DNA of 32,420 nt from Fonticula alba ATCC 38817 (lineage: Eukaryota > Protista > Nucleariida). This document shows, piece by piece, positions 120 to 25,699 of this stretch. The position numbers and the translations under genes are program-made. The notes beneath the pieces are model-generated. The model saw nothing but the letters and a program-made list of their open reading frames with translations. It was not told where the DNA came from and made no database searches. How positions within the stretch are numbered: position 1 is the stretch's first letter; the number at the start of each line of letters is the position of its first letter. Location: assembly GCA_000388065.2 (NCBI GenBank), contig KB932201.1; one strand, 5' to 3'.

Positions 120-3100
120 ATCTCCCTCAACCTCTTCCGGTCTTTGGCCCCCGAAGTCAACCCTCATGGGGATGCATTTGATCCGGATGAGGATGAGCCG
201 GTTCTGGAGCCGGCCTGGCCGCATTTGCAGTTGGTATACGAGCTGTTTCTTCGGTTCATCGAGTCGGCCGACTTCAACTCCAAAATCGCCTCGCGCTACA
301 TCAACGAGCTCTTTATTCAGGAGGTGCGCACCGCGGGCGGCAACCCATGGCCCCATCTACTTGGCCTTACCCCTGCAGGACGCACACGCACCTGCATGCA
401 TCGCACGCACGCACGCACGCAGGCTTCTAATGCTCCCTCCTCCCTCCCCAGCTTCTTGCCCTTTTCGACGGCGAGGACCCGCGCGAGCGAGACTACTTGA
501 AGACCACCCTTCACCGGATCTATGGGAAGTTCCTCCCCCTGCGGGCATTCATCCGCAGGGCCATCAACGACGTGCTGCTGTCCTTCGTCCATGAAACCGA
601 GCGGCACAATGGTGTGGCTGAGCTGCTGGAAATCCTGGGATCCATCATCAATGGGTTTGCCCTGCCGCTCAAGCGCGAGCATGTCATTTTCCTGAAGCGC
701 GTGTTGATCCCCCTCCACAAGGCCCGCGCCCTGTCGCGCTTCCACCCGCAGCTGGCCTATTGCGTGGCCCAATTCGTGGAAAAGGATCCCTCTCTGGCCG
801 AAGTGGTATGTGTTGCCGGGGACAAAGCACCCCCCCCCCCCCCCCTGCCCAGGCGACCTCGCATCGCTCTTTAACCAACCACCCAGGCTGGCGGCGATGC
901 CAGCCTGCCTTCGTGTACCACTTCGCCCGAGTGGCATTTCAGGCGCGTGAGGATGCCGGGGCCCCCGCCCCTCCCGGCGACCCGCACGCCGGAGGCAGGG
1001 AGCCTTTCCTGACACGTATGCCAGGGATGCATACTCCCGTCTATGGGGGACCAGCAGGGGGGGGGGGGGGCGGAGCCCAACCGGGCCCCGAGTGCAGCGG
1101 CATCCAGTCGGTCCGGAGGCGGCCGGAAGAAATTTGCTCCCAACACGCCCCCACGAATACGGCCCCCGGACGGGGGAGGGTGGGCGGGGAATTCGCTGTC
1201 CATCAGGCGGCGGCCCCTACCCTGGTTGCCGGGGCGCGCGCACGCAGGAGGAGGTCTAAGCGCGATGGGCGCGCCTGCCGGCCGGGCGCGCAAGCCAACG
1301 GGTGCGCGCTCTCTCTTTAATCACGGCCGCTTGAAAGGACGAAAAATTCGTCTTCTTGCAGTGTTTCCTCCGCGCCCCCCCCCCGCCCCCTGCCCTGGAC
1401 GGCCTCTCACATACTTACATTTGCAGGGCGGGGGCGGGGGGGCGGGGCGACCGGGGGCGGGGTTGGGGGGTGCCGGGCCCGACCAGGGAGGGGCCTGGGT
1501 GCGGGAGCGGGAGACAGTCGCCTGTGCCCGTGTCTGCCGCGTACGCAGGAAGGGGGGGGGGGGCGAAGGCCGGAGGGCGTCCTTTTTCCCTCTCCAGGCC
1601 CCTCCCACCAGTAGGCGGGGGCCATCGCCGGCGCCGCCGGGGGAAGAGGAGCTCTTTCAGATTGCGATCTCATGTTCCCTGCGCCTGGTCCCGCAGTTCC
1701 CCATTGCTTTCCGAAGAGCCCTCCCACCCCCATCCCCTCGCGACCGTAATCCCATTCTCCGCCCCGCCTCCCTGCCTCCCGCCTGTCTCTCGCCTCGCTC
1801 CCCGTGCGCGCGCGTGTCCGCAGTCTCCTTTCCTCCCTCCCTCCCCGTGCCTGCCTGTACGCTGTCCTCAAACACCCTCGCCTCCGCCAGACTCCCCTGG
1901 TGGCGGCCTCCTCCCCGTCCTTCCGCTTGAGGTCAGCCCGCTCACTCTGCCGCCCCCTTCTTCCCCTCTCCCCGGTCACTCCTCCCNNNNNNNNNNNNNN
2001 NNNNNNNNNNNNNNNNNNNNNNNNNNNTCTCCCCCCGGTTGTGCGCATATCTCCACGTTGCAGGTGCTCCGCGGCCTGCTCCGGTACTGGCCAAAGACCA
2101 ACAGCCCCAAGGAGGTGATGTACCTCACCGAGGTGGAGGAAATTTTGGACGCCACCGAGCCGGCCGCCTTTGCCAGGGTCATGATCCCGCTTTTCCAGCA
2201 AATTGCCCGGTCCACGGCCTCGCTACACTTCCAGGTGGCCGAGCGGGCCCTGCATTTGTGGAACAACGAGTACCTGGTGTTTCTGGTTCAGCCGGCCGTG
2301 GAACAGATCCTGCCGATCATCTTCCCAGCCCTGTACCGGAGCTCGCGGAATCACTGGAACCGGTACTTTTGCCCTCCGCATCTCGGCTCTGCCTTTCTTC
2401 GCGCTCCCCCCCGGCCGGGGGACTCCCTTTTTTTTTTTTGGGGGGGCCTGTGCTCCGGCGGCCCTTTCTTGGCTCTTCCTAACTCCCTCTCCCTCGAACC
2501 TGTCCCCTTCTTCCTTCTCTCCTCCGTGTCTGCGGCTCGCTCACGGCCCAACACCCAATTACGCACACGCTCCCCCCCCCCCCCCCCCGATATAACCCCA
2601 GCAATCTGCATGGCCTCGTTTACAATGCCCTCCGCCTGTTCATGGAGATCTGCCCGGCCCTGGTGACCGAGTGCACGGCCCGTCTTGCGCGGGAGAAGGA
2701 GGCCGCCGCCGCCGAGCGGCGCTCACGCACGGATGCCTGGAAAACCATCTATGAGCGGGCCCTCCATAATGCGGCCACCCTTGGTCTTCCGGAGCCCGAC
2801 TGTCCGTGGAAGTCGCCGGATGGCGGCGAGTCGCCGGATGGCGGCATCGGCTGGGGTGGCTTCGGCCTCTTCGGCGATGTGGAGGATTCGGATCTGGACT
2901 ACTACCACCACCAGCAGCAGTATCAGCAGGCACAGCAGCAAGCACAGGAGGCCGAGCAGCAGCACCATCACCAGCAGCAGCAGCAGCAGCATGCACAGGA
3001 GGCGCACTTCCAGCAGCAGGCGGCAGCCGAGCAACACCATCAAATGCAGCAGCACATGCAGCAGCAGCAGCAGCAGCAGCAACAGCTCCTCCAGTTCCAG

Positions 3101-3431
3101 GCGCAACAGCAGCTCCTGCAGTTCCAGGCACAGCAGCAGCAATTCCACCAGCAATTCCAGCAGCAACAACAACAGCAGCAGCAGCAGCAGCAAATGGATG
3201 CCGGGACGTTTGTGTCCGGGCACTTCCAGCAGCAGCCGGCCACGCAACCCGGGCCTGGCCTGGGCGATGGGTCCTTCCTTCCAGCCGGGTCTGGAGGCGA
3301 TGCCCTGCTGGGGCCGGATGAGCTGGCTCTCCACTACCAGGCCATGAGCCTCGGCAATGAGGGCCAGTTCCAGGAGCAGCAAATGCCGGAAATGATGATG
3401 ATGAGTCACCACCACCACCAGCAGCTCCTCC

Positions 3432-5030: not shown

Positions 5031-5794
5031 TATTTATCTATTCATGTCCACGAATCGAGCATATGATTGCTCGCCCTTTGATCATTGCCGTCTTTGATGC
5101 TGATACGGCATGGCGCTCAATTGTCGCCGAATCTCCTGGCCGACACAGAAGACAGGGTCACGAGGTGACAGGCGGAGAGGGGGCGAGGGGGGCGGCAGCG
5201 GCGGACGCCGAAGGGGAGGGCGGCAGCGCCGGCCACACATCCCTGGCCTTTTTTATTGAGAATAGCAAAACCACGGCCTGCTGCCCTTGGTGGGGCCATC
5301 GGCAAACCCCCTGTGCAATGGCCGAACTGCTGTGTGGCGACGGAAGGGGGCATCGAGTGTGTTGTAGCCGCGTCCGTTGCCCATGGGAAAGGAATGGAGA
5401 AGGGGAAAAAGCCGGTCCTTGATGTGTCTCAACACTCGGGGGGAGGGGGAAAATGTGCAGGGGGCATGCGAAAAAGGGGGGGGGAAAAAAAAAACAAGAT
5501 GCCGGAGACGGATCTGTCCGATCGCGCGCCTGAAAATAGAAAACACCGCACAATAATGGATGGCGCGCGGCCGCCGAGTTGGTCTGTGCCGCGCGCTCCC
5601 CCCTTCTCCTTCACACGCACGAAAGGCAGGCACAAACGGGGAGCCACAGCGCCCCCCCTTCCCCCCCTTGGGGGGACACTGCGCTCCAGGGACGAGCGTG
5701 GGAGCAGGAGGCCGCGCGCGCGCGTGTCGGAGACGAAGGAAAGGGAGAAGTGGCTTCAATTCTTAAGAGGGAAAAAGGGGGAGCGTATGATGCA

Positions 5795-5975
5795 AGGCAG
5801 TGCATGGAGCTAGTGCGGATTCCACGACCACCTGCGATCCACCTGGCACGAAGCCAAGTGGTTCACGCCTCAAATATAGGGAAAATACCAATAAAGTCAT
5901 ATTGACTTTACTTTAGGTATTAACCTAAAGAGAACAGATACTACACTTGATCTTAGCCGAAGCAAGAAAGCTGAT
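5795..5975 (-). ncRNA. RNU2: U2 spliceosomal snRNA
   Basis: Minus strand reads ...UUGCUUCGGCUAAGAUCAAGUGUAGUAUCUGUUCU..., the near-invariant U2 core with the GUAGUA branch-point recognition sequence. It is followed by stem IIa (CUUUAGG-UUAAUA-CCUAAAG, 5911-5930), stem IIb (UAAAGUCA-AUA-UGACUUUA, 5892-5910), a candidate Sm site (AUAUUUGAG), stem III (CCACUUGGC-UUCGU-GCCAGGUGG) and stem IV (CGUGGA-AUCCGCACUAGC-UCCAUG). Length is about 180 nt. Ends are approximate. Confidence 0.94.
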
Positions 5976-6756
5976 CCCAAGTCCTTACGGTCGGCGCGTC
6001 GACGACCCTTCTTGTCCCCGGGACTTTGCCCGGCAAGAGGACGCCCGAACTTGGCCCCTCTAAGTAACACCATTCGGGGCGGACCATCGCCGGGCCCCGA
6101 GTTGGGGCCCCACATTCCTCTTCTACACCCCGGGGGATGATCACGGGTTGGGCAATAACGCTGACTGGCTGGCGTTCCTCGGCTCCGTGGATACGCCCCC
6201 CCCCCCCCCCCCCCCCCCGCCGCACCGAGCCGCGCCCCGCCATCCGCCGCCCGCCAGCACCCGAGCCCGAGAGATGGCGAGGGCAGCTCCCCGGCCCAGG
6301 CCCGCGGAGCGTTGGAGATCGGTCCACAGCGGGTGGCCTCCCTCGGGGCGGGGAAGGCCACCCCGCTCTGGCCGGCGTCGGCCCCGCGCCTGCCTCAAGT
6401 GCCCCCTGTCTGTTGTTGTCGGCCGCCCGGCACCGGCCCCCGGGCAGCCCGCCCCCCTCTCACCACCCCGCCCGGAGCGGGCCCGGCGGCTGGCCCCCCC
6501 ACCCCCCAGGCCGGCGTCCGCCCTGCAGCGCCCGGCCCGGGGCCAGGATGCCGGGCCCGGGGCGCGGAGACTTCCGACCCTTTTTTGCCGCTCGATCTAC
6601 GCGGGCTGCGCGAAGAATCGCGGGTCAGGCTTCGCCCCCCGGCTGGTCGGTCGGCCGGCCGGCCGGCCGGTCGGTCCCCAGCGCGTGTGCTGGGGCATTT
6701 TTACGCGGACACGCACACTTTCGCACCCCCTGCCCCCCTTTTTTTGTGGCCGCCCC

Positions 6757-7337
6757 NNNNNNNNNNNNNNNNNNNNNNNNNNNNNNNNNNNNNNNNNNNN
6801 NNNNNNNNNNNNNNNNNNNNNNNNNNNNNNNNNNNNNNNNNNNNNNNNNNNNNNNNNNNNNNNNNNNNNNNNNNNNNNNNNNNNNNNNNNNNNNNNNNNN
6901 NNNNNNNNNNNNNNNNNNNNNNNNNNNNNNNNNNNNNNNNNNNNNNNNNNNNNNNNNNNNNNNNNNNNNNNNNNNNNNNNNNNNNNNNNNNNNNNNNNNN
7001 NNNNNNNNNNNNNNNNNNNNNNNNNNNNNNNNNNNNNNNNNNNNNNNNNNNNNNNNNNNNNNNNNNNNNNNNNNNNNNNNNNNNNNNNNNNNNNNNNNNN
7101 NNNNNNNNNNNNNNNNNNNNNNNNNNNNNNNNNNNNNNNNNNNNNNNNNNNNNNNNNNNNNNNNNNNNNNNNNNNNNNNNNNNNNNNNNNNNNNNNNNNN
7201 NNNNNNNNNNNNNNNNNNNNNNNNNNNNNNNNNNNNNNNNNNNNNNNNNNNNNNNNNNNNNNNNNNNNNNNNNNNNNNNNNNNNNNNNNNNNNNNNNNNN
7301 NNNNNNNNNNNNNNNNNNNNNNNNNNNNNNNNNNNNN
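6757..7337. other. Assembly gap (581 N). Other gaps: 1987-2027, 16258-16299, 17764-18042, 27477-27597
   Basis: Runs of n, each adjacent to C-rich or CT low-complexity sequence. Confidence 1.
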
Positions 7338-10827: not shown

Positions 10828-11438
10828 GGTGCCGATAGCGTGGTGGCAAGGTGTATGCGTGCGTGTGTGCGTGCGTGTGTGTGTGGGGGGGGGGACGTAC
10901 ACATGGTGGGGAAAGGGAGGAAGGGGGAAAAGATTGAGAGAGAGCAGGACAGGGATGCCGATTCGGTGTCTGTCCAGCGGGCTGTTTGATGGCCACCTCT
11001 TCTGGGCATTTCACATTTGCCCGGGCGCCCCTGGTCCGCCCCGTCCAGTCCAGCGGACGGGGAGGGGGGGGGGGGGGGTGCGGATCTCCCGTCGCGTCCG
11101 GCCAAGTGCGCCTCCAGAGCCGCGGGAACACGGAACGCGGCTGGGGTGGAATACAGCGGGACAGTGATCGGGGTCAGCATTGGCAGATGCCAACGCGCGG
11201 TGTCCCGAGCATGTTTGAGCCCACCCCCGGCCCTGGGGCCCCGGCACCTCGGAGCAAGGCGGCGGCGGCGGCGGCCGCCGTAGAAGGGCATCCGTCGTGA
11301 TGGGTGCCGGCACACATCTGGGGACATCTCGCGCCACGTCCTCCCCTTCTCCCCCCTGCCTCTGCTGCTTCGTCCCCCCTCCCCCGCCCCTCCCCCGCCC
11401 CTCGCCCCTCCCCACTTTCCTCTGGCCGGCATCAATAG

Positions 11439-11910
11439 CCATCGAGGGCCGCACTCAGTTCGACATGCTGCAGGTGATCCAGCGCGAGTACAAGCTCCGG
11501 TCATACTCGCTGAACTCCGTGTCCATCGAGTTCCTGGGCGAGCAGAAGGAGGATGTCCATCACTCGATCATCTCGGACTTGCAGAACGGCAACTCCGAAA
11601 CCCGCCGGCGCCTGGCCGTCTACTGTCTCAAGGATTCGGACCTGCCCATGCGGCTGATGGAGAAGCTGATGTGTGTCTTCAACTTCGTGGAGATGGCCCG
11701 TGTGACCGGCGTCCCGTTCACATACCTGCTCACGCGTGGCCAGCAGATCAAGGTCGTGTCGCAGCTCTTCCGCAAGTCCCTCGAGCGGGACTTCCTCATC
11801 CCCACTCTGCGTGTGGGTGGCAGCGGCGCCGACGAGCAGTACGAGGGTGCCACCGTCATCGAGCCGGAGCGCGGGTACTACTCGAAGCCGATTGCGACGT
11901 TGGATTTCTC
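11439..11910 (+). pseudogene. POLD1: Single isolated internal exon of DNA polymerase delta catalytic subunit (end of exonuclease domain to start of polymerase motif A); gene fragment or misplaced assembly piece
   Basis: [109 protein letters not shown] is unmistakable Pol delta. Intact acceptor (TAG 11436-11438) and donor (GTGCGC 11911). No other Pol delta exon is visible on either side. Identity confidence is high; status is uncertain. Confidence 0.85.
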
Positions 11911-11996
11911 GTGCGCATCCACCTCCCTCCATCTCTGCTCCATGACCCGCGGGGTTCCTGCCTCCGGCGTTTCTCACCACTGTGCTTTGCCCCTCG

Positions 11997-12115
<119 letters not shown>

Positions 12116-12157
12116 CCCGCCCCTTCCCCACCTCGGCTTACTATCGCCCCGTCTGCC

Positions 12158-13452
12158 ATGTCTGCCAGCGAGCAGGATTCCACCGCGGCGGCCGCCACGC
12201 CGGCCGCCATGACCGACGCCGGGCGGCCCGGCGTCGCGGGCACCGCCACCAGCGTCGCCTCCCCGCCGGGCCCCCGGACCGACGGCAAGAAGCTCGGGTT
12301 CTTCCGTGACCCGCGCGTGACTTTGGGCATGGTCCCGCTGGACCGGGGGTTCCGAGCGGCGGACGTGAGCATGCCCATCTCGCAGGACCTGTGGTTCTAC
12401 ACCAAGTCCAACTTCCAGACCTTCTCCACTTTCACGGCATGCTTGCTGCCGGTGCTCGTGCTGTCGTACAACTCGCGCTTCTGGCGCTCAGCCGGCACGA
12501 CGAGCCTGCAAGCCATGTTGCAGTCATGCACGCTGGTCCCGGTGCGTACGCCAGCTTGCCACCTTGTCGCCCGAATGCCGGGCCCTCGAGACACTGTGGG
12601 CTGTGCCATGCTTGGGCACTCCCTCGTTGCATGCAATTCTCACCCATTCTTCGGCCCCTCGCCGGGGCCTTCCCTCGCTCGCCCTGCCTTGTCCCCCGCC
12701 CGCCCCCCTCCCCTCCACCTCCCCGGGGCATCTGTCTCCCTCAGGCGGTCCTGCCGCTGGCGGTGCTGGCCAGCCAGTGGCTGTCCACCTGGTCCATCGA
12801 GAGCCCGGCCGCGCGGCTGGCTTCCGTCCGGTCGGCCTGCCTGGCCCGCTACGAGTCCCTTCGCCGGCGGCGTGGCGATCTGATCTCCGGGCTCGGTGCG
12901 CCCCCATGCCCCCTTTGCCGTGTTATAAATGGCCTCTTTTCCCTCTCTTTTTGATTCCCCCCCCCGCGCCCCTGGGGACCGGCTAACCCTCTCCTCGCCT
13001 CCTTCTCCTGCTGGCCCGCTCTCCCGCGCCGACCATCAGGCGTGGCCGTGGGAGTCCTCTGCACGCCGATCATCACCCGGCAGCTGACCTCCTCGGCCAC
13101 CCTCTTCCGGCGAGTGATCTTTTCCGGGGTCGTCGGCGGGTCGGTCGCCGCCGGCCTCAATCTCATGGACACCATGTACCGGGAGATGCGCCTGGCCCGG
13201 AGCCTGAAGCACATCTGCGAGGGGCAGCTGGTCCGGTCCGGGGCCATCCCCTCCAGCCAGCAGGCGGTCACCATTCAGCAGGACCGCGAGGCGGGCCGGG
13301 CCGAGCTTGCTGCCGCCACCGGCGAGTATCCGCTGGCCTTTGTCGGCATGACCACCATCGAGCGCAATGCCCTGATCGAGGCGCGCTTGAAGGAGGTCCG
13401 CTCGGATGCAGCCCAGATGCGACCCATTGCCGAGGCCTTCGGCCTATACTGA
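12158..13452 (+). CDS. Uncharacterised multi-pass membrane protein (about 315 aa), weakly Tim17/22/23-like; model join(12158..12541,12745..12895,13040..13452)
   Basis: gccATG start and phase-consistent introns (GTGCGT..CAG, GTGCGC..CAG). About four hydrophobic segments ([57 protein letters not shown]) with small-residue GxxxG-like motifs, then a charged helical tail. The family call is weak. Confidence 0.72.
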
Positions 13453-13846: not shown

Positions 13847-15182
13847 CCTTGGGAGTGTTGAAAGGAATCACGGCGCTCCGGAGCCGATCGTCAGCTTGGC
13901 AGAGCGCCGCGACGCGGTCAGAAAGAAGAGCATGTAGCCGACTCCGGCCGGCCTACAGATCCATCGGGGTCAGCCAGTTGGCCGGTCAGTCGCGAGATCC
14001 GCCATCAAGGGGCGAAGCATATGTGTCACATGGGTGTACCTCATCGAAGGGGACGCCGCCGCGGCGCTTCCTGGCTGCCGGCACGTGCAGGATGATCGCC
14101 CCGCCAAGCGCCGGGTCCAGCAAGGCCACAGCCAGGTCGACCACTGCTCGGAGGGCGTGCTCGCCATTTTGCAGGGCGGCTCGCAGGAGGCTCGAGCTAT
14201 GTTTCGGAGGCCAGTCAGCATGGGATCCCAGGCACGGCGGGCGAAGGGGGCGGGAGGAGGCGGGGGGGGGGGGCGGGGGGGGGCGGGAAACCCGGGATAC
14301 ATACCAATACACCACGTCGAAGGTGCCCGGGTGGAGGACCTCCCCCAGGGAAGGATGGACATCGTCCAGCGGGGTGTCATCAGCCCCGGATGCCAAAAGG
14401 TCCGCACACAGAAGAGCCACATTGAAAGGCCACCGGAGTCGATCAAGGCGAGGGCCCTGCTCCTCCTGCAGTGGCAAGTCCGCCGGAGGGGCATTTTTCA
14501 AGGCGGCCGCCGCATCGGCCACCGGCAGCGGGTCGCCAAGCGCCAGCATTCGGCGCCGGGCATCCAGGGCGGCGGCTTCCAGACGCTCGCCCTGGCGCAC
14601 GTCAACCGGGGCATTGTGCTGGCGGCTGGACCGGAGCCAGCGTGCGAGGTGGCCTCCACCGGGGCTGCTGGCAACTGGCCGGATGTTCTCCCCGAACACC
14701 GGCAGTGGCAGGGGCAGGAAGCCGCCGGCCCCCGGCAGCGACATCGGGAAGTAGCTCTCCGGCCCGGCCGACCCTTGGGGCATTTGCCCCTCGGAGTCGA
14801 CCACCGGCAGGGCGCCCGGCGAGCAGAGGGAGGCGCTGGCCCGGGCCACCAGCCGGGCATGGCGAATCTTGGCCAGATCATGGTCAACCCCGATGACATG
14901 CACCAGTCCCGGGCCGAAGTCCCGAGCACCCGGGATCGCCAGCCGGGCAAGGTGCTGCGTCAGCCGGCCACTGCCGCAACCAAGATGTGCAAGGCGCAGC
15001 GGGCGCCGGCCGCCGACGGTCGCAGGCTCTCCGGCCACCATCAAGGCCGGCACCTCTTTCAGGGCTGCCTGGAGGAAGTACATCAGCGGCTCAACCACCA
15101 GCGGGGAGACTGGCTCAATGTCCGGGGCCGGACGCTTGGCTGGGGGCATCGCATCGGCCGCCGGGCGCGTACGAGGGGGCAT
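13847..15182 (-). CDS. Class I SAM-dependent methyltransferase-like protein; exons 15182..14305, 14196..14040, 13952..13847; last exon or stop unresolved (about 13.65-13.75 kb)
   Basis: Motif I LRLAHLGCGSGRLTQHLA, motif II VHVIGVDHD, later LCADL..GTFDVVYWC and GGAIILHV strands typical of the Rossmann MTase fold. Donors GTATGT (14304), GTACAC (14039), GTGCGC (13846) with phase-matched acceptors. Confidence 0.72.
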
Positions 15183-15757
15183 CCCTCGTGTGGTGGATGC
15201 AAATCCAATGGACCCGCGGCCGGGCAGACAAGGCACAAGGGGGGAGAGTGGCCGGAGCACTTGGCAGGCCAGAAGGTGGCGGGCAAAGCAGGAGAGGAGG
15301 GGGGGGGGGGGGGGGGGACGGGGGCAGAGGAGGGCAGAGGAGGGCAGAGCAATGTGGCATGGCTGGGGCTCCGGTCGCCCAGGTGCCCCCCCCCTCGGGG
15401 GGCGCGGCTCTTGGGGTGCTTTCGTGCGGCACTCGATCGCGAGCCGGCGAAGGCCCCCCTGCGCCATCGTTGGCAGTTCCCCAACTGCGCGGGGCTCGAT
15501 GCGCGCGTGTGTTGCCCGGCCCGTCTGCCCGTCTGCCCGTCTGCCCGTGGGCCGAGGGGAGAGGGGGGCGGCGAGGGGGAGGGATGTCGGGCGTGGCGCC
15601 GGCAGGAGCGGGGCCTGTCTCCCCGCCCGAAGGGCCCACGATCCGCGAGGGGGTGATGTGGAGCCGGCCTGGCCGCCGTGACCGGCAAGGGTTTCCTCTT
15701 AGCATCTATCCTTCCCTCCCCTCCCCCTCTTCCCCTTGCTTTCTATCACACGCACCC

Positions 15758-17628
15758 ATGGGCGACGGCAATCCTTCGCCCCGGGACACCCATCCCGGGG
15801 GCGGTTTTCGCCACCACCACCATCACTCCCAGCAGCAGCCGAGGCAGCAGCAGCAGCCGCCGCAGCAGCAGCAGCAGCATTCCTCGCACTCGCAGCAGCC
15901 AGCCCTGTCGTCTCATGCCCCACAGCACCCTCCATTCCCTCCGCACCAAGGCAGCCACCACTGGTCGTACTCCTCGGGCCATCATCCGCCCCAGTATCCG
16001 CAGCACCCTCCCCACTTCCACCACCCCCACCACCAGCAGCAGCAGCCGCCCCCGCCGTCCTTCCCGCGCCACCATCATCATCATCATCAACATCTCCATC
16101 ATCGGCAACAGCCCTACCGCCCTCACCAGCAGCCTCCCCGCGGCCGGGCACCTGCCAATCAGAACACCCGGGAAAAGCGCCTGGTACGCTCTCACCCTGG
16201 GCTTTGAGCATTGCTGACCGGCCCAGGGCGCCGCCTTGCGCCATGGGCTTGCCCCCCNNNNNNNNNNNNNNNNNNNNNNNNNNNNNNNNNNNNNNNNNNC
16301 CCCCCCCCTGCCCCTGCCCTTGCCCCGGGACTGACGTCGCGCCCTGTCATCCGCCACCACCGGCCTAGAGCGAGCACATTCCCCAGCTCCCTGACCTGAA
16401 GAGCATCCCCGACGAGCTGTGGCAATTCTTCCGCGAGCGCCTGGCCCTCGTTCGGTACCCGGACCCGGGGCTGATTGTGGCGCACCTGCGGCGATTGATG
16501 CCGGCCACGGCCGGCGAGCCTGGCACGCCGGAGCTCCTGCGGTCCGTTCTGTCGGATGGCATCCAGCGCCAGGACCCGGAGGTCGTGGACCCGGCCCGGC
16601 CGGACCCGGATTCCGGGGCCCCCTTCAACAATCCCTGCGGGGCTCGGTACCAGCTGGTTCTGAGTGACAGCGACTGGCGGGTTCTCTTTGCCGAGTACTC
16701 GGACGCGCAAATCCTCTTCTGCCTGGTGCGGCTCTTTTTGGATGGCCATCGTTTTGGCCGGCCGGTCGGCGACGATGGCCAGACCGAAGACGGCTGGTCC
16801 CGGGCCGCGCCGGCCATCAACCCCGACACCGGCGCCCGGGTGGAGCTCCACTCCCCGGCGGATGATGAGCTCGTGCGCCTGACCTTCCCCTACAAGCACC
16901 TGTCCTATTCGGCCGGCGATTGCGCGCAGCTCTTCACCAATCTGTCGCGCTTCTACCTGGTACGCCCTCGGCATTTGGCGGCTCGCTGTCCTCCGGCCCG
17001 GGACCCGGCCCCGACTGACCGTGTCTCGTGCCCCCTGGTCGGGCATGCCTCGGTGGCCCTCCCGCCTCCCTGCCCTGCTCAGAGCCCGTCCACCTTCAAG
17101 CATCCCAAGGGCCATCGTGCCCCCCGGTGGGACGTCCGGTACCGGAGCGACGCCATGTGTGTCGTCTATATGCCGATGCCCAGCTTCAAAGACGGCCCGC
17201 AGGACCGATGCTTCTATGTGATCGGCGACAGCCACTACCATGTGATTGATATCCTGCCAGACCTGTTCACGGAGCCCGTGCGCCTGCGGGCGTCACGTCG
17301 CAAGTTTGGCTCCACAGCCGCTGTCACCAGCTCCCACTGCCCGAACGAGTCGCGCGAGGCTCTGGATGGCGAGATTTTCTCCCCCTCCGTGCACGCCACC
17401 TGGTACGGCGTGGCCGACGAGTCGAACCAGGCCGCTGACCCGACCGGCCGGTCGCGCTCACATGTCACGGCCGCACTCTACAGGTGTGTACTCTGGCTTC
17501 CCTGCCTCTCTCTTTCTCCCTGATCTGTCTCTCCATCTTTGTGTCTCTCTTTTCTGCTCCTTCCTCAAGGTCCTGACTGACAGTTGGCTTTGTCTTTGGT
17601 TTGGCCTCTTTCTCTCTTTCTCTCTTTC

Positions 17629-17659
<31 letters not shown>

Positions 17660-17678
17660 TTCTCTCTTTCTCTCTCAT

Positions 17679-17748
<70 letters not shown>

Positions 17749-19318
17749 CCCCTCTCCCCCTCTNNNNNNNNNNNNNNNNNNNNNNNNNNNNNNNNNNNNN
17801 NNNNNNNNNNNNNNNNNNNNNNNNNNNNNNNNNNNNNNNNNNNNNNNNNNNNNNNNNNNNNNNNNNNNNNNNNNNNNNNNNNNNNNNNNNNNNNNNNNNN
17901 NNNNNNNNNNNNNNNNNNNNNNNNNNNNNNNNNNNNNNNNNNNNNNNNNNNNNNNNNNNNNNNNNNNNNNNNNNNNNNNNNNNNNNNNNNNNNNNNNNNN
18001 NNNNNNNNNNNNNNNNNNNNNNNNNNNNNNNNNNNNNNNNNNCTCTCCTTTTCTGACACAGTCCCCCGGCTTGGCCGATCGCAGGTCTCGATCGCCGTTC
18101 AGTTCTACAAGCAATTCAAGGCCACGCGCATTCTGGACATCTCGGCTGGCTGGGGCGACCGCATGATCGCCGCGCTGGCGTGCGCGCCGACCGTGCGCAC
18201 TTACGTCGCATGCGATCCCAACCGCACGCTGATCGAAGGGCACTCGCTCATTCGGCAATCCTTCTCCCGGTATCTGGAGGAAAAGCCCCCCCAGGACCAG
18301 GAGCCTGGGCAGTTTGCCCCACATGCCGCGGACTTCCGTGTGGTGTATGGCCCCTTCGAGTCGTCGGACCTGAAGCTGGCCCCGGGGCAGCGCTTCGACT
18401 TGGCCTTCAGCTCGCCGCCCTACTTCAACTTCGAGAAGTACACCTTCGACCAGACGCAATCCTGGGTGAAGCACGGGTCCAGCTCGGACTCGTGGCTTGT
18501 TCGCTTCCTGCTCCGGTCGTATTCCCGCTGCTGGTCGCTGCTTGAGGTGCGAGGCGCATGGCTCCCCGTGTGCGGGATGCTCTTTCCGGGGGGAGGGGGG
18601 GGGGGGGTCGCGCTGCTGCTTGGCCGACTCTTTTTTTCTTTCTTTCCCGGCCCCCCTCGTTCATCTCCTCCTGGCTCCTCCTCCCTCTCCCCCCCCCCTC
18701 TCTCTCTCTCTCTCTCTCCGTCCAGCTGTCCCCCTTCTCTTTTCCTTTTGCGCACTGCCTCTTCCCCTCCCCCTCCCAGGTCCTGACTCCTTCTCCCCCC
18801 TCCCCCCGGTGCGCAGGATGGCGGCCACTTGGCCATCTACATCCAAGATGTGTCCGATGAGCCGATCTGCGAGCCGATGTCGATGTTCGTGCTGGCGCAC
18901 CTGCCCAACTCCTCGGCCCGCGGAGTGTACAGCATCCTCGGCGGGGTGGGGAAGTCGCGCCCGGTGTGGGTGTGGCAGAAGCAGGCCCCCGGAACAAGCC
19001 CCTTCGCGGCCGAGGGCCGGCTCCAGTTCCCGACCGGGTCCTTTGCCCCGGTGAAGCCCGGCGATCTGTCCATTCCCTTTGTGCCCTGGTCCAGCGGCGC
19101 CGAGCCCACCTTCGACGAGCGGGTGTCGCGACTTCTGTCCTTGGCAGATCGCCGACGCATCGACGACGAGTTCGATGTGCACTACCCCATCGCTCGGCGA
19201 CTGCTCTTCCTCGGTGGATCTGACGCCACCGACACCACGGTCCCACCGCCGGATGTGGTGGCCTTCAGTGGCCGGACCCAGGCCATGCATCTGTCCGAGG
19301 GGTGGTTCGATGGGGGCT
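15758..19318 (+). CDS. His/Gln-rich N-terminus plus SPPY-type amino (N4-cytosine/N6-adenine) methyltransferase domain; exons 15758..16183, 16369..16959, 17083..17483, [exon predicted in N gap], 18085..18546, 18817..19318 (or stop at 19326 if unspliced)
   Basis: Motif I RILDISAGWGDRMIAA (18127-18174), motif II YVACDPN, catalytic motif IV FDLAFSSPPYFNFEKY (SPPY at 18412-18423), and LLE|DGGHLAIYI across a phase-0 intron (18547-18816). Upstream FPYKHL and IDILPDLFTEPVRLRA blocks match my recollection of this MTase family. Confidence 0.88.
17605..17763. repeat. Degenerate (CT)n/(CTTT) microsatellite in an intron, next to an assembly gap
   Basis: Direct reading. Confidence 0.95.
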
Positions 19319-19464
19319 GTGCGTGACGCACGCGCTCTCCGCTCTCGTGTGCTCTCTTCTTTCTTTCCCCTTTTTTTTTCCGCCCCCGTCCCGCACTTGT
19401 TCCAGCCCCGGCCCAGGCCAGGCCGGGGGGCGGACACTTTCTAACCATAGCGAGCACGCTCGCC

Positions 19465-19510
19465 TTCCTTCTTCTTCTTCTTCTTCCTCTTCCTCTTCCT
19501 CTTCTTCTTT
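19465..19510. repeat. (CTT)n/(CCTCTT)n pyrimidine tract, the candidate polypyrimidine tract of the intron joining the MTase and GNAT domains
   Basis: Direct reading; ends about 10 nt before the CAG at 19520-19522. Confidence 0.85.
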
Positions 19511-19522
19511 TTGGGTCGACAG

Positions 19523-20845
19523 TCGACATTGCCCCCCTGCACGAGGCATCGGCCGAGTTGCGTGCCGATGCGGCCATCCTCTTCCAGCAGGCCGGGCTAC
19601 GGGCTGCCGAGCTCAGCGAAAACTATCCCGTGGCCTCGGTCCGGGCCAACCTCGGCAGTGAGGCCTTCCGGGCGTTGGAGGACCCGCCGCAAATGCAGGA
19701 CCTCTTCCCGGCGGCCTCCGGCGATTCGAAGACCTCGAGAAGCTCGGCCGATGCGCATGACCCGGCTGTGGACTTTGTGTGTGACTACCTGCGCGCTGGC
19801 CAGGCGGCCATTGTGGCCGGCCAGCCGGGCCCCGGCGGCGAGGACCCGGCCGATGGCCGGTGGTGGGTGGCCACGGCCCGGTCGACCGGCTTCGCGGTGG
19901 GTCTTCTCCGAGCTCGGCGCGTGCCTGCCGCCGGTGCGGCCGGCGCCCCTGCGGCCGATGTCCCGGGCAATGAGGCTCCGGCCGAAATGTGGCTGGTCAG
20001 TGACTTTGCCGTGGCCCGTGCCTGGGACACGGACTACGCCGCCATCAGCTACGCCCTGCTCCGGGAGTTTGTCCGGTCGGTGGCTCCAGCCGACGGGACG
20101 GCCGGTGCCTGGCCGCTGGTGCGCTTCCGCTTCTGGCCGTGGATGCGCATCCGTGGCGCGCCGGACTCGGAGCTTTCCGAGCCCCAGCACTATCAGAGCC
20201 CCAATGCTTTGGTAGAGGCACAGCGTAAGTTCAGCACGCTGCTCCTGGAGTGCATGGCTCCGGGGGCCTCTTCCGAGGGGTTCGATGCGGGGCTGCTCAG
20301 CCGTATGGTGCGTGGGGCTGCGCCTCTGCCTTTCCCCCCTTGCCGCCTGGCGCTCGTCTGTCGTCAACTGCCGCCTCCCCCCCCCCCCCCATTCGCCGCG
20401 CATTTCGCTCTCCTCTCTCTCTCCCCTCGGAGCCTCCCACTGCCTTTTTTTTGTCTTCGCTGACACCCCTCGATGCCGGTCGCGCGATGTGGGCGCCTGC
20501 TCAGTGTGACTCGGTCCTGGAGCACGCCAAGGCCCTGTGGACGACAAGCCGCGGCCGGTCCTCGGGCTTGGACATCAAGTTCCCGGCGCGCCGGGGCGCC
20601 GTGGCCGCCAAGCGCACCATGCGTTTCAGGTGAGCATTCTGTGCCTGGAAGGCTCCCCCCCCCCTCCCCCCCCTCCTGCCTCCGCCTGGGCGGGGCTCCT
20701 GTTGTTTGTGTGCTCCCCCGGCCCCCTGCCATTCGCGGTCTGTCCTTCCCCCTGCTTCTGTCTTTTACTTCTCCTCTTTGCCCCTTTCTCCCGGCTGGCT
20801 CGCTGGGCCGGCAGCTGTTTGTGGCTTCATGCGCGCGAGCTGTGA
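19523..20845 (+). CDS. GNAT-like acetyltransferase domain; exons 19523..20307, 20505..20629, 20815..20845; probably the C-terminal part of the preceding MTase gene
   Basis: DIAPLHEASAELRADAAILF (beta1-alpha1-like), WWVATARSTGFAVGLLRAR (beta2-beta3), MWLVSDFAVARAWDTDYAAISYALLREFV (motif A-like beta4-alpha3) and terminal SCLWLHAREL*. Phase-consistent introns GTGCGT 20308..20504 and GTGAGC 20630..20814. No in-frame ATG precedes the first 55 or so codons. Confidence 0.62.
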
Positions 20846-23900: not shown

Positions 23901-25699
23901 CGTCTGGCAAGGGACCATGTACCCGAGGGCGGCAATGCGAGGCACCACGCGCTCGGCAAACTCCATGTACGAAGCAATGCGTGGCTCGGGCGAGGCGATG
24001 CCCACTGCATGGAGGGGCATCGGGAAGGCAGGGAGGATATGAGCCGCGTGGCGGTGGGGGAAGGGGGTATGTAGGTGAGAGGGTGAGGGGCAGCGCGCAC
24101 GCGCGCGCGTGGCGGAGGCGGCAAGCAGGAAGCACCGAGGGGGAGGCAGGGAAATGCCCTGGCCCCGGCCAGGGGAGGATCGCACCGTGGGCCTCGTAGA
24201 TGAGCAGACGCTGGCCTGGCGGCAGGGGCGCCGGCCGGGCAAAGCGCGGCCGGTACGGCCGCTCGGGACTCCAGTGGATGGCGTCGAAGAGCTTGCCATC
24301 GCCCCCGCCGGCCAGCAGGTACTTGGCCCAAGCGGGGGCCCGCTCGAGCCAGGCGCCAGTGTTGCGAGTCCGAAAGCCGACCTGCTCCCGGCGTGCCCCC
24401 CGGGGGGCGAAGGTTAGCCGCGACAATCAGCGATGCAGGGACCGGAGGCACATGGGGGCGCACCTTGTACCGGGACTGGTGGGGGATGGCCGGCCCGGCC
24501 GGGCCGTGGGGGATGAACACATGGTGGACGCCGTCCTGATCCCGAAGCATGGGGAAGTCGGCGCGCCGCCAGTCGGCTGGGCGTGGGGCCGAGAGCCCGG
24601 CATCCACGGATGCGGGTCTGTGTCAGCGAGGAGGCGGTGTGTGTGTGTGTGTGTGTGTGTGCGTGCGTGCGCGCGCGTGTGCGTGCGTGTGTGTGTGTGG
24701 GTGTGGGTGTGGGTGTGTGCGAGCATGTGGGTGTGTGCGAGCGTGTGGGTGTGGGTCTGCAAGCGATGCGGGGAGGGAAAAACAAAAGGAAGCTGGAGAA
24801 AGGAGGAATGGCGTCCGGGCGGCGAGGGAACATGGGCGCGTACAGAAATCCCCGAAAAGGAAAGCACACCGGCCGTTGGGGATCCACTCGCGGTACCAGA
24901 GGCCGGGGACCAGGGCATCGGGCCCGGCTTCCGGAGCCTGGCATGTCACGGCCTCCGGGTACAGTGTGTCCAGGGCGGGGCCCAGGGCCGACGGGACGGT
25001 GCCATCCCGGTGGCACCCCATGTCCAAGGCCAGGGCGCACCGATCGGGCAGGGAATCCTGCTGCGAGACAAAACGCTGGCCAAGCTTCTGCAAGCGCTGG
25101 TAGAAGTGCGCGGTGGCCGCCGGGGCCGTTCCCTCGATGATGCCGAAGAAGAGGTGGCCCTCGGCGAAGTGCTGGAGTGCCATGCGCTCGGGCGACCCCT
25201 CGGCCAGGGGATCGGCGTCGCGCGGGGCACCGGCCGCCTCGGGACCATGGGCCTCCCGGGGGCCGGGGGCCGGCGTGCTGCGGAAGGGCAGCGCGGCGGC
25301 CACGCACGCCGGCAGCGGCCCCGGCCGGGGGACTTGGATTTCCGCACGAGTCAGCGACTGGAGCATGCGCGCGGCATCCTGGCGCCGGGCCGCCAGAGCG
25401 CCCTCAAACCATCCGAGAGCGGGATCGTGGGCGGCAGCCCGGCGTGCGGCCAGCACATGCGGTCCCACGGCCTCGGCAGGCTCGCGGGCTGGCTCGGGGT
25501 TCCCCGGCCCGGAGGCCAGGTGGTCCATCGACACGGCCGACACGAAGGACCCGAGCGAGGAGAGCGAGCTTACCAGCTCGGCGGACGACTCGACGGGCTG
25601 GCAGGCGCTGGCCGAATCGGTGGCGCCGGGCTTGACGACAGCCTTTAGGCGGGACTCCGGCAGATCGGGCGGCATCTCCACAACGGCGGAGCAGGACAT
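20994..25699 (-). CDS. GBE1: 1,4-alpha-glucan branching enzyme (GH13_8); 12 exons: 25699..24844, 24576..24464, 24381..24186, 24004..23923, 23779..23586, 23478..23391, 23272..23158, 23086..22760, 22607..22438, 22263..22162, 21959..21830, 21644..20994
   Basis: [63 protein letters not shown] (nucleophile Asp), [10 protein letters not shown] (acid/base Glu), [48 protein letters not shown] and [11 protein letters not shown]. All junctions GT-AG and in phase. Confidence 0.96.
24638..24760. repeat. (TG)n/(TGCG)n/(GTGTGG)n compound microsatellite in GBE intron 1
   Basis: Direct reading. Confidence 0.9.

What the first reader, a model, noticed from the sequence alone, without database searches (positions are those of the whole stretch)
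18085..18546. Spliced eukaryotic SPPY amino-methyltransferase of a prokaryote/giant-virus-like type
Seen: LDISAGWGDR (SAM binding) followed about 85 aa later by FSSPPYFNFEKY, with no large insert between motifs I and IV. The gene has spliceosomal introns and a eukaryote-style His/Gln-rich N-terminus. Established: (S/D/N)PP(Y/F) is the catalytic motif of exocyclic amino MTases, and SPPY is typical of N4-cytosine DNA MTases; eukaryotic 4mC writers are known only from rare horizontal acquisitions (bdelloid N4CMT, Marchantia). From memory, the xAGWGDR..SPPY..E.Y pattern occurs in phage and NCLDV MTases. Inference: a horizontally acquired, domesticated DNA (4mC/6mA) or RNA methyltransferase that may give this lineage an undescribed epigenetic mark.
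Basis: partly seen in the sequence, partly recalled or inferred. Interest (0 to 1): 0.85.

Follow-up and report, generated by a model that had tools for sequence, protein, structure and literature searches.

The report
Giant-virus-type SPPY methyltransferase in Fonticula
An intron-containing nuclear gene of the protist Fonticula alba encodes an intact member of an unnamed methyltransferase family shared by giant viruses and many single-celled eukaryotes; in the viruses this family is repeatedly fused to the enzymes that cap messenger RNA, so it more likely marks RNA 5' ends than DNA.

Summary
Window 18085-18546 is exon 4 of Fonticula alba H696_00159 (XP_009492269.1, "hypothetical protein", 1099 aa, 7 GT-AG exons, 15758-20633). 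It carries LDISAGWGDR and FSSPPYFNFEKY about 85 residues apart.

The protein is a divergent but intact member of an unnamed family: a family-specific N-terminal domain followed by an unpermuted SPP(Y/F) methyltransferase (MTase) domain. It scores E 1e-66 against a family profile and keeps 40 of 44 highly conserved columns. No Pfam, NCBIfam or PDB sequence match reaches significance.

Relatives occur in giant-virus (NCLDV) contigs, one T4-like phage contig, and many protists: Capsaspora, six choanoflagellates, four amoebozoans and Stygiella. The gene sits among host genes (Pol delta, U2 snRNA) and has host codon composition (GC3 0.85).

It is not an N4CMT-type or PF01555 DNA methylase. Viral relatives are fused, in several independent architectures, to:
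- the mRNA guanylyltransferase/N7-methyltransferase capping enzyme
- FtsJ 2'-O-methyltransferase
- PCIF1-like and Tgs-like cap methyltransferases
- an NPH-I-like transcription helicase

A GNAT domain often follows the module directly.

The best reading is a co-transcriptional, cap-proximal RNA base N-methyltransferase (confidence about 0.5). A DNA 4mC/6mA writer remains a rival (about 0.2). The direction of virus-host transfer is unresolved.

The parts
15758..20633 (+). Whole annotated gene H696_00159 (7 exons, 1099 codons plus stop)
   Evidence: Exact mapping of P0045 onto the window. Protein identity.
15758..16183 (+). Exon 1: His/Gln/Pro-rich low-complexity N-terminus (residues 1-142)
   Evidence: No similarity to other family members. 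pLDDT about 30.
16369..16959 (+). Exon 2: lineage-specific N-extension, then the start of the family N-domain (the FPYK motif lies near its end)
   Evidence: The family profile match starts at residue 312, which is window 16876.
16876..18984 (+). Span of the conserved family module (N-domain plus MTase, residues 312-684), interrupted by three introns
   Evidence: hmmsearch against the family profile covers columns 19-332 of 336 at 210 bits. 40 of 44 highly conserved columns are kept.
17083..17487 (+). Exon 3: family N-domain (the D..F.E..R motif). An alternative in-frame donor after 17409 would remove a 26-residue insertion
   Evidence: The two splice variants score 211.5 and 214.0 bits, so the choice is undecided. 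Residues 446-459 have low pLDDT.
18085..18546 (+). Exon 4 (the finding): MTase motifs X and I to IV and beyond
18133..18162 (+). Motif I, LDISAGWGDR (SAM-binding loop)
   Evidence: The columns are 90-100% conserved in the family.
18406..18441 (+). Motif IV and following residues, FSSPPYFNFEKY (catalytic SPPY plus invariant E and Y)
18817..19318 (+). Exon 5: second half of the MTase domain (DGGHLAIYIQD ... VWVWQK), then a linker
   Evidence: pLDDT is above 90 up to about residue 690.
19523..20633 (+). Exons 6-7 (19523-20307 and 20505-20633): annotated C-terminal extension with no detectable relatives. It depends on an intron (19319-19522) that removes an in-frame stop at 19324-19326
   Evidence: No Pfam hit. 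No similarity to family members and none to their GNAT domains. Low pLDDT.
16184..16368 (+). Intron 1 (GT..AG; contains a 42-N assembly gap)
16960..17082 (+). Intron 2 (GTACGC..CAG, 123 nt). It is absent from all relatives aligned
17488..18084 (+). Intron 3 (GTACTC..CAG; CT-rich repeat and a 279-N gap)
18547..18816 (+). Intron 4 (GTGCGA..CAG, 270 nt), inside the MTase domain
   Evidence: The junction lies between conserved profile columns 276 and 280.

Best explanation
The locus is a nuclear, intron-bearing Fonticula alba gene. It encodes a catalytically intact member of an unnamed family of SAM-dependent exocyclic-amine methyltransferases. The family module is a family-specific N-terminal domain of about 150 residues followed by an unpermuted Rossmann MTase with DxSAGWGDR and SPP(Y/F)...E.Y.

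Shown:
- family membership
- intact motifs
- host genomic setting and composition
- wide distribution in giant viruses and protists
- repeated fusion of the module to mRNA-cap and transcription enzymes in giant viruses

Inferred: the module methylates an exocyclic nitrogen of a nucleobase at or next to the mRNA 5' cap. The target would be the first transcribed nucleotide or the cap guanine. It would act co-transcriptionally after guanylylation and N7-methylation, with the N-domain supplying substrate recognition. In many relatives an adjacent GNAT domain may act on the same substrate. The target atom (N6-A, N4-C or N2-G) is not determined. The Fonticula copy has its own unrelated N- and C-terminal extensions, which may localise or regulate it.
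For: Membership and integrity. The profile match has E about 1e-66. 40 of 44 columns that are at least 85% conserved are kept, including all MTase motifs. The AF2 model of the Fonticula MTase domain has pLDDT above 90, and the family model has pLDDT 89.2 and pTM 0.87.

Host setting. A Pol delta catalytic-subunit fragment lies upstream (E 1e-72 to yeast Pol3). Also nearby are a U2 snRNA and glycogen-branching-enzyme and ankyrin genes. GC3 is 0.85 against 0.87 for Pol delta and 0.12-0.38 for viral homologues.

Cap link.
- P0048, P0192, P0271 and P0272: guanylyltransferase, then mRNA_cap_C, then N7-MTase, then the module, on an NCLDV contig.
- P0135: N7-MTase-like region (RNMT, E 3e-5), then module, GNAT and TTL.
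- P0273: region matching human capping enzyme 8p4a (E 2e-5), then a further MTase domain, the module and GNAT.
- P0314: Ecm1-like N7-MTase, then module, GNAT and an ALKBH8-like dioxygenase.
- P0090, P0317 and P0320: FtsJ 2'-O-MTase with the module. P0090 also has a Tgs-type cap guanine-N2 MTase.
- P0161, P0312 and P0313: PCIF1-like domain (PF12237, E 6e-31) with the module.
- About 40 clusters of roughly 2100-aa proteins combine the module with a helicase. In the one example tested (P0299), the helicase's only PDB match is vaccinia NPH-I, a viral RNA-polymerase-complex subunit (E 5e-12).
- Neighbourhood: on an 865-kb NCLDV contig the module-PCIF1 gene lies 1.6 kb from the capping-enzyme gene, with a GNAT gene adjacent. 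IF4E lies within 6 kb in two other NCLDV contigs.
- A full-length structural match to an uncharacterised protein of a poxvirus.

Context from a paper: mimivirus mRNAs have a near-invariant, modified +1 A that is read by the viral IF4E (10.1101/2025.09.30.678621).
Against: - There is no direct evidence on substrate for any member.
- All cap-link evidence comes from viral relatives 30-45% identical to the Fonticula protein, which lacks those fused domains.
- The MTase core's nearest named relatives are DNA methylases: PF01555 partial hits in 15 of 40 members, T. thermophilus TTHA0409, and phage genes annotated as N4-cytosine DNA methylase.
- One member sits in a T4-like phage contig next to PolB and another N6_N4 MTase. 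Capped mRNA is not expected there, from general knowledge of bacterial hosts.
- A UDG fusion exists (P0252).
- MTase-helicase fusions are also known for DNA methylases.
- Fusions to GNAT, TTL and PALP would also fit a protein or metabolite substrate.
- Gene neighbourhoods in other NCLDV contigs were uninformative.
Confidence: 0.5

Rival explanations
1. It is a DNA methyltransferase writing N4-methylcytosine or N6-methyladenine. It would give Fonticula and other carriers a DNA mark, and giant viruses a genome mark.
For: The S-P-P-aromatic motif is present. There are partial PF01555 (N6_N4_Mtase) hits, best 1.2e-8, in 15 of 40 members, and PHROG 'DNA methyltransferase' hits. PDB profile hits include TTHA0409 modification methylase. 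Cultured-phage core homologues are annotated as N4-cytosine DNA methylase. A phage-like contig places a member beside PolB and another N6_N4 MTase. A UDG fusion exists. Database names call viral members DNA MTases.
Against: The names are automatic. PF01555 matches cover only the motif IV-VIII half of the profile (positions 2-109 of 221), and the Fonticula protein has no Pfam hit at E<=0.01. The motif order is not the permuted beta-class order. No target-recognition domain was detected between or after the motifs, and no restriction partner was seen in any of the neighbourhoods examined. At least ten independent architectures and neighbourhoods link the module to capping or transcription enzymes. 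The module also occurs in a poxvirus.
Confidence: 0.2
2. It methylates an internal position of a stable RNA (rRNA, tRNA or snRNA; m2G, m6A or m4C), like RsmD, Trm11 or METTL5-type enzymes.
For: There are sub-threshold hits to PF03602 (RsmD family) in 8 of 40 members, and again in the fused proteins. JGI names them RsmD/TrmN6. Foldseek neighbours include Trm11, PH1948, MnmM, TrmN and rRNA methylases. The best PDB profile hits are 3evz and the RsmD-like 2esr.
Against: All these matches are generic (TM 0.3-0.7 on the Rossmann core, E about 1e-5). No THUMP or other known RNA-binding module is present. Stable-RNA enzymes are usually universally conserved, whereas this family is patchy and abundant in viruses. 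Fusion partners are cap and transcription enzymes, not ribosome or tRNA factors.
Confidence: 0.12
3. It N-methylates a protein or a small molecule, as part of a modification cassette with the acetyltransferase, ATP-grasp ligase or PLP enzyme that often follows it.
For: A GNAT domain lies directly after the module in 9 of 320 proteins. TTL/ATP-grasp, PALP and peptidase S9 fusions also occur. PDB profile hits include PRMTs at E about 0.1-0.3.
Against: The PRMT hits are not significant. The same GNAT-bearing proteins also carry the capping enzyme (P0135, P0273, P0314). No substrate-protein clue was found.
Confidence: 0.1
4. The Fonticula copy is a decaying or functionless remnant of an old giant-virus insertion. 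It is merely annotated as a gene, and parts of the 1099-aa model are artefacts.
For: It is the longest branch in the family, at least 1.21 substitutions per site from every other member and 28-38% identical. Two conserved N-domain residues are lost (W to T, R to P/D). The N- and C-extensions have no relatives and low model confidence. The C-extension depends on one unverified intron that removes an in-frame stop. Assembly gaps lie in two introns.
Against: The module has no stop or frameshift across four exons, and all splice sites are canonical. Every SAM-binding and catalytic column is kept. GC3 equals that of a housekeeping neighbour. No other viral gene is in the window.
Confidence: 0.06

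Closest known systems
PCIF1/CAPAM cap-specific adenosine-N6 methyltransferase (PF12237)
   Same: It is an exocyclic-amine MTase with an x-P-P-aromatic catalytic motif plus an accessory domain. It acts after capping. PCIF1-like domains occur in the same giant-virus polypeptides as this module (P0161, P0312, P0313), and a module-PCIF1 gene neighbours a capping enzyme gene.
   Different: The module itself gives no PF12237 hit. Its first motif residue is S in 98% of modules, whereas the PCIF1-like domain of P0313 has N. The N-domain is unrelated by every search run. Co-occurrence in one protein argues for a different specificity.
Tgs-type cap guanine-N2 methyltransferase (PF09445)
   Same: It is a cap-directed exocyclic-amine MTase. 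Weak PF09445 hits occur in 4 of 40 members (best 1.1e-3). A Tgs-like domain is fused with two modules in P0090.
   Different: The hits are below the Pfam threshold and the Fonticula protein has none. The Tgs-like domain in P0090 is a separate domain with its own motif.
Beta-class N4-cytosine/N6-adenine DNA methyltransferases (PF01555; e.g. TTHA0409 2zie; bdelloid N4CMT, PMC10406627)
   Same: The SPPY-type motif IV and the following helix/strand region align. The motif X-I segment also resembles the beta-class one in the profile alignment.
   Different: The motif order is I to IV (unpermuted), not IV to I. Only half of the PF01555 profile is matched. No target-recognition or chromo domain was detected. 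A unique N-domain is present, and the fusion partners are RNA-cap enzymes.
RsmD-like m2G methyltransferases (PF03602/COG0742) and P. furiosus 3evz
   Same: They have the same unpermuted order and a compact Rossmann core. They are the best PDB profile hit (3evz, E 1.9e-5) and give recurrent sub-threshold PF03602 hits.
   Different: There is no significant family-level match. The module is about 150 residues longer at the N-terminus, and its phyletic pattern (viruses and protists) is unlike that of RsmD.
Predicted DNA methylases of Vibrio, Bacteroides and Staphylococcus phages (e.g. MG592662.1, annotated as N-4 cytosine-specific DNA methylase)
   Same: Their MTase cores are 27-33% identical to the module over 35-52% of the query.
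   Different: They lack the family N-domain (no hit covers 80% or more of the query). Their function is also only predicted.

Membership tests
Unnamed NCLDV/protist 'N-domain + AGWGDR/SPP(Y/F)' module family (defined here from 243 modules) | End-to-end match to the family profile (N-domain plus MTase) | tested here: met
   hmmsearch gives 211-214 bits and E about 1e-66 over profile columns 19-332 of 336.
Unnamed NCLDV/protist 'N-domain + AGWGDR/SPP(Y/F)' module family (defined here from 243 modules) | Conserved residues of motif I (D.SAGWGDR), Y..DPN, SPP(Y/F), E.Y, QS, W...F, and W.W.K | tested here: met
   40 of 44 columns that are at least 85% conserved are identical. The four differences lie in the N-domain or are conservative.
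N4CMT / beta-class N6_N4 DNA methyltransferases (PF01555) | Significant PF01555 match | tested here: not met
   The exon and full P0045 give no hit at E<=0.01. Relatives match only profile positions about 2-109 of 221, mostly below the gathering score.
N4CMT / beta-class N6_N4 DNA methyltransferases (PF01555) | Circularly permuted order (motif IV before motif I) | tested here: not met
   Motif I is at residues 491-500 and SPPY at 584-587.
N4CMT / beta-class N6_N4 DNA methyltransferases (PF01555) | SPP(Y/F) catalytic motif | tested here: met
N4CMT / beta-class N6_N4 DNA methyltransferases (PF01555) | 4mC (or 6mA) deposited on DNA | not testable with these tools
   No modification data are available for Fonticula or any family member.
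PCIF1/CAPAM (PF12237) | PF12237 match covering the catalytic region | tested here: not met
   P0045 and 40 relatives give no PF12237 hit. PF12237 hits lie in separate domains of the fusion proteins.
PCIF1/CAPAM (PF12237) | Physical or genetic coupling to the capping and transcription machinery | tested here: inconclusive
   This is met for viral relatives through fusions and a neighbourhood. It is not shown for the Fonticula protein itself.
Tgs cap guanine-N2 MTase (PF09445) | PF09445 match above threshold | tested here: not met
   4 of 40 relatives hit at a best E of 1.1e-3, and Fonticula gives none.
RsmD family (PF03602) | PF03602 match above threshold | tested here: not met
   8 of 40 relatives hit at a best E of 2.4e-4, below the cutoff, and Fonticula gives none.
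   There is no PDB sequence hit. Trm11 appears only among generic Rossmann matches (E about 1e-5, TM 0.31-0.42). The distribution is patchy, and no animal or fungal sequence was among the hits listed.

The most novel reading that the evidence does not exclude
The family writes a so far undescribed base methylation on the cap-proximal nucleotide or the cap guanine of mRNAs. It may be paired with an acetylation by the adjoining GNAT and erased by AlkB-like domains. The system would be shared by giant viruses, at least one poxvirus lineage and many protists, including the closest unicellular relatives of animals. Tandem active/inactive module pairs would work like METTL3/METTL14-type heterodimers.
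Probability: 0.3. Interest if true: 0.85.

Novelty: new variant of a known kind. Interest (0 to 1): 0.62.

Why it matters
If the cap reading is right, this unnamed family adds a new enzyme class, and probably a new chemical mark, to mRNA 5'-end biology. The mark would be present in giant viruses and in choanoflagellates, filastereans, Fonticula and amoebozoans, but apparently lost in animals and fungi. That bears on three questions:
- how viral and host mRNAs are told apart by cap-binding factors
- the evolutionary traffic of RNA-processing genes between giant viruses and their hosts
- the annotation of hundreds of giant-virus 'DNA methyltransferases' that may not act on DNA

If the DNA reading is right instead, several protist lineages would carry an unrecognised 4mC/6mA writer. 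Either way, the locus shows that SPPY alone should not be read as DNA 4mC.

Tried and rejected
- **Curated libraries.** Pfam, NCBIfam and PHROGs on the exon, the full protein and relatives gave no significant family.
- **PDB sequence search.** phmmer of the exon found nothing.
- **Foldseek.** Both AF2 models against PDB gave only generic class-I MTases and no match for the N-domain.
- **Viral insertion?** Rejected. The neighbouring PolB is host Pol delta, the other neighbours are host genes, and GC3 is host-like.
- **Shared intron positions.** Intron positions in profile columns are 45/147/277 in Fonticula, 194 in S. rosetta, and 25/96/118/125/226/312 in Planoprotostelium. Capsaspora has no introns. 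None is shared, so this is uninformative on ancestry.
- **Neighbour-joining tree of 243 modules.** Eukaryotic and viral sequences interleave and Fonticula is a long branch. The tree is too crude to call a direction of transfer.
- **Alternative donor at 17409|17410.** The score is the same as for the annotated donor, so this stays undecided.
- **GNAT-like C-extension in Fonticula?** No similarity to the family's GNAT domains or to anything else.
- **NCLDV neighbourhoods.** L006, L007 and L008 gave no recurrent partner.
- **Literature.** Five searches found no description of this family. The 2015 survey of eukaryotic adenine MTases (PMC4738411), in the sections read and searched, does not describe a clade with this distribution.
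Full report
**1. Observation**

Window 18085-18546 (+) translates without a stop. It contains LDISAGWGDR (18133-18162) and FSSPPYFNFEKY (18406-18441). The stretch is 100% identical to residues 475-628 of P0045, which is Fonticula alba XP_009492269.1 / KCV72568.1 (H696_00159, "hypothetical protein", 1099 aa, on a 4.77-Mb scaffold).

Joining the annotated exons as they stand reproduces P0045 exactly. The exons are:
- 15758-16183
- 16369-16959
- 17083-17487
- 18085-18546
- 18817-19318
- 19523-20307
- 20505-20633

All six introns are GT...AG, and two contain assembly gaps. A U2 snRNA gene at 5788-5974 (-) confirms nuclear eukaryotic DNA.

**2. The protein family**

No curated library recognises the protein. 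Pfam gives only Methyltransf_23 at E 0.09 for the exon and nothing for the full protein. NCBIfam gives nothing. PHROGs gives only short motif-IV hits. PDB phmmer gives nothing.

It nevertheless has thousands of relatives. phmmer of the exon against 1.84 billion representatives finds 2653 proteins at E<1e-3 and 710 at E<1e-10. Alignments show a two-part module of about 330 residues:
- an N-terminal domain with FP.K, D..F.E..R, SP...W and LRE..Y....EC.QFK
- an unpermuted Rossmann MTase with D.SAGWGDR, Y..DPN, SPP(Y/F), E.Y, QS, W...F and W.W.K

Of 243 modules, 229 have SPPF or SPPY.

The Fonticula protein matches a profile of 40 relatives over columns 19-332 of 336 (about 211 bits, E 1e-66). It keeps 40 of the 44 columns that are at least 85% conserved, including every SAM-binding and catalytic column. 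AF2 gives a confident family model (pLDDT 89, pTM 0.87). It also gives a confident Fonticula MTase domain (pLDDT above 90 for residues about 470-690). The Fonticula-specific N-extension (1-311) and C-extension (685-1099) are unmodelled and have no relatives.

Three introns interrupt the module, at profile columns 45, about 147 and 277. The translation stays collinear with intron-less viral relatives across each junction. An alternative in-frame donor after 17409 would remove a 26-residue insertion. It scores the same as the annotated donor (214.0 against 211.5 bits), so I leave it open.

**3. Genomic setting**

The neighbours are host genes:
- a Pol delta catalytic-subunit fragment (E 1e-72 to yeast Pol3)
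- the U2 snRNA gene
- a glycogen-branching-enzyme gene
- an ankyrin gene

Module GC3 is 0.85, against 0.87 for the Pol delta fragment and 0.12-0.38 for viral homologues. There is no sign of a recent viral insertion.

**4. Distribution**

Relatives lie on several kinds of contig:
- Giant-virus (NCLDV) contigs: L002 (Rpb1, PCNA, IF4E, DUF5760), L004, L006, L009 and L010.
- One T4-like phage contig, L001.
- Eukaryote nuclear genomes or transcriptomes. These are Capsaspora (intron-less, host context), six choanoflagellates including Salpingoeca rosetta, the amoebozoans Planoprotostelium, Protostelium, Arcella and Mastigamoeba, and the jakobid Stygiella.

BFVD structures give full-length matches (TM 0.7-0.8) to metagenomic pithovirus-like and klosneuvirus-like proteins that are automatically named DNA methylases. 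They also match an uncharacterised poxvirus protein. Cultured phages have only MTase-core relatives without the N-domain.

In a neighbour-joining tree, small clades follow taxonomy: the Choanoeca pair, S. rosetta with Hartaetosiga, and the two protostelids. Eukaryotic and viral sequences interleave, and Fonticula is a long branch, at least 1.21 substitutions per site from everything else. Intron positions are not shared among Fonticula, S. rosetta and Planoprotostelium. The family is therefore not a rare one-off acquisition. The direction and number of virus-host transfers are unresolved.

**5. Function**

The core belongs to the exocyclic-amine MTases. The best PDB profile hits are 3evz (E 1.9e-5), the modification methylase TTHA0409 and an RsmD-like protein. 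There are partial PF01555, PF03602 and PF09445 hits. Foldseek against PDB returns only generic class-I MTases, with Trm11 among many. None of this fixes the substrate.

The informative signal is domain fusion in long giant-virus proteins:

| Proteins | Architecture |
|---|---|
| P0048, P0192, P0271, P0272 | guanylyltransferase, mRNA_cap_C, N7-MTase, then two modules |
| P0135 | RNMT-like N7-MTase, module, GNAT, TTL |
| P0273 | region matching human capping enzyme, a further MTase domain, module, GNAT |
| P0314 | Ecm1-like N7-MTase, module, GNAT, ALKBH8-like dioxygenase |
| P0090, P0317, P0320 | FtsJ 2'-O-MTase with module; P0090 also has a Tgs-type cap guanine-N2 MTase |
| P0161, P0312, P0313 | PCIF1-like domain (PF12237, E 6e-31) with module |

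The commonest long form (about 40 clusters, roughly 2100 aa) joins the module to a helicase. For the member tested (P0299), the helicase's only PDB match is vaccinia NPH-I, a subunit of the viral RNA polymerase complex.

On an 865-kb NCLDV contig the module-PCIF1 gene lies 1.6 kb from the capping-enzyme gene, with a GNAT gene beside it. IF4E lies within 6 kb in two other contigs. A GNAT domain follows the module directly in 9 of 320 proteins.

I therefore favour a co-transcriptional N-methyltransferase acting on a base at or next to the mRNA cap. The target atom is undetermined. The membership, integrity and fusions are shown. The substrate is inferred, and the inference is transferred from viral relatives that are 30-45% identical.

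Against this stand:
- the DNA-methylase affinities of the core
- the phage contig
- a UDG fusion
- the fact that GNAT, TTL and PALP partners would also suit protein or metabolite substrates

**6. Comparison with known families**

It is not a member of any of these:
- N4CMT/PF01555: unpermuted motif order and no significant hit.
- PCIF1 (PF12237).
- Tgs (PF09445).
- RsmD (PF03602).
- Trm11/HemK.

It may work like PCIF1 or Tgs, as a cap-directed amino-MTase. I found no description of the family in the literature searched, including the 2015 survey of eukaryotic adenine MTases.

**7. Verdict**

The gene is a real, intact, host-embedded member of an uncharacterised MTase family shared by viruses and protists. 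SPPY here does not indicate DNA 4mC.

Confidence by explanation:
- cap-proximal RNA methylation: about 0.5
- DNA methylation: about 0.2
- other RNA: about 0.12
- protein or metabolite: about 0.1
- functionless relic: about 0.06

Novelty: a new variant of a known kind. Interest: 0.62.

Noticed in passing
window 5788-5974 (-): A complete U2 spliceosomal snRNA gene (Rfam RF00004, 101.7 bits, model positions 1-192).
   Followed up: partly
window 11297-12883 (+), especially 11438-11980 and 11997-12123: A fragment of the DNA polymerase delta catalytic subunit (E 1e-72 to yeast Pol3) runs straight into a run of 127 C. The public annotation gives only a 460-aa product here. The gene looks broken by an assembly or sequence oddity, not viral.
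   Followed up: partly
window 13989-15467 (-): A long ORF overlaps the annotated divergent neighbour gene. It has a GCGSG-type SAM-binding loop but only sub-threshold Pfam MTase hits (E 0.012), so a second, unrelated possible methyltransferase lies head-to-head with the finding's gene.
   Followed up: partly
window 19319-19522 and 19324-19326: The annotated 1099-aa model needs an intron that removes an in-frame stop six bases after its donor. Without that intron the protein ends at about 797 aa. The roughly 300-aa C-terminal extension has no relatives, no Pfam hit and low model confidence, so it may be a separate gene or a mis-join.
   Followed up: partly
related proteins P0048/P0192, P0066, P0046, P0050, P0103 (tandem modules): In five of six tandem-module architectures, one copy has a non-aromatic or truncated fourth motif-IV residue (SPPM, SPPS, SP--). 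In two of these architectures (P0048/P0192 and P0066) that copy also has an altered motif I. This suggests active/inactive paralogue pairs within one polypeptide.
   Followed up: partly
related proteins P0314, P0135, P0273, P0317, P0139; locus L010 7380-7877: A GNAT acetyltransferase domain starts within about 2 residues of the module's end in four large viral proteins, and a GNAT is a separate adjacent gene in L010. An ALKBH8-like dioxygenase or a TTL ATP-grasp domain often follows. This looks like a multi-enzyme modification cassette.
   Followed up: partly
loci L002 4727-5311 and L009 3775-4497: A viral IF4E (cap-binding protein) gene lies 5-6 kb upstream of the module gene in two different NCLDV contigs. 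This may be synteny or chance.
   Followed up: no
window 2912-3140, 24637-24753, 17606-17756: Simple repeats: a long imperfect CAG array, a GT dinucleotide array, and the CT-rich array inside intron 3. Long N gaps lie around 6750-7300, at 16259-16300 and at 17765-18043.
   Followed up: no
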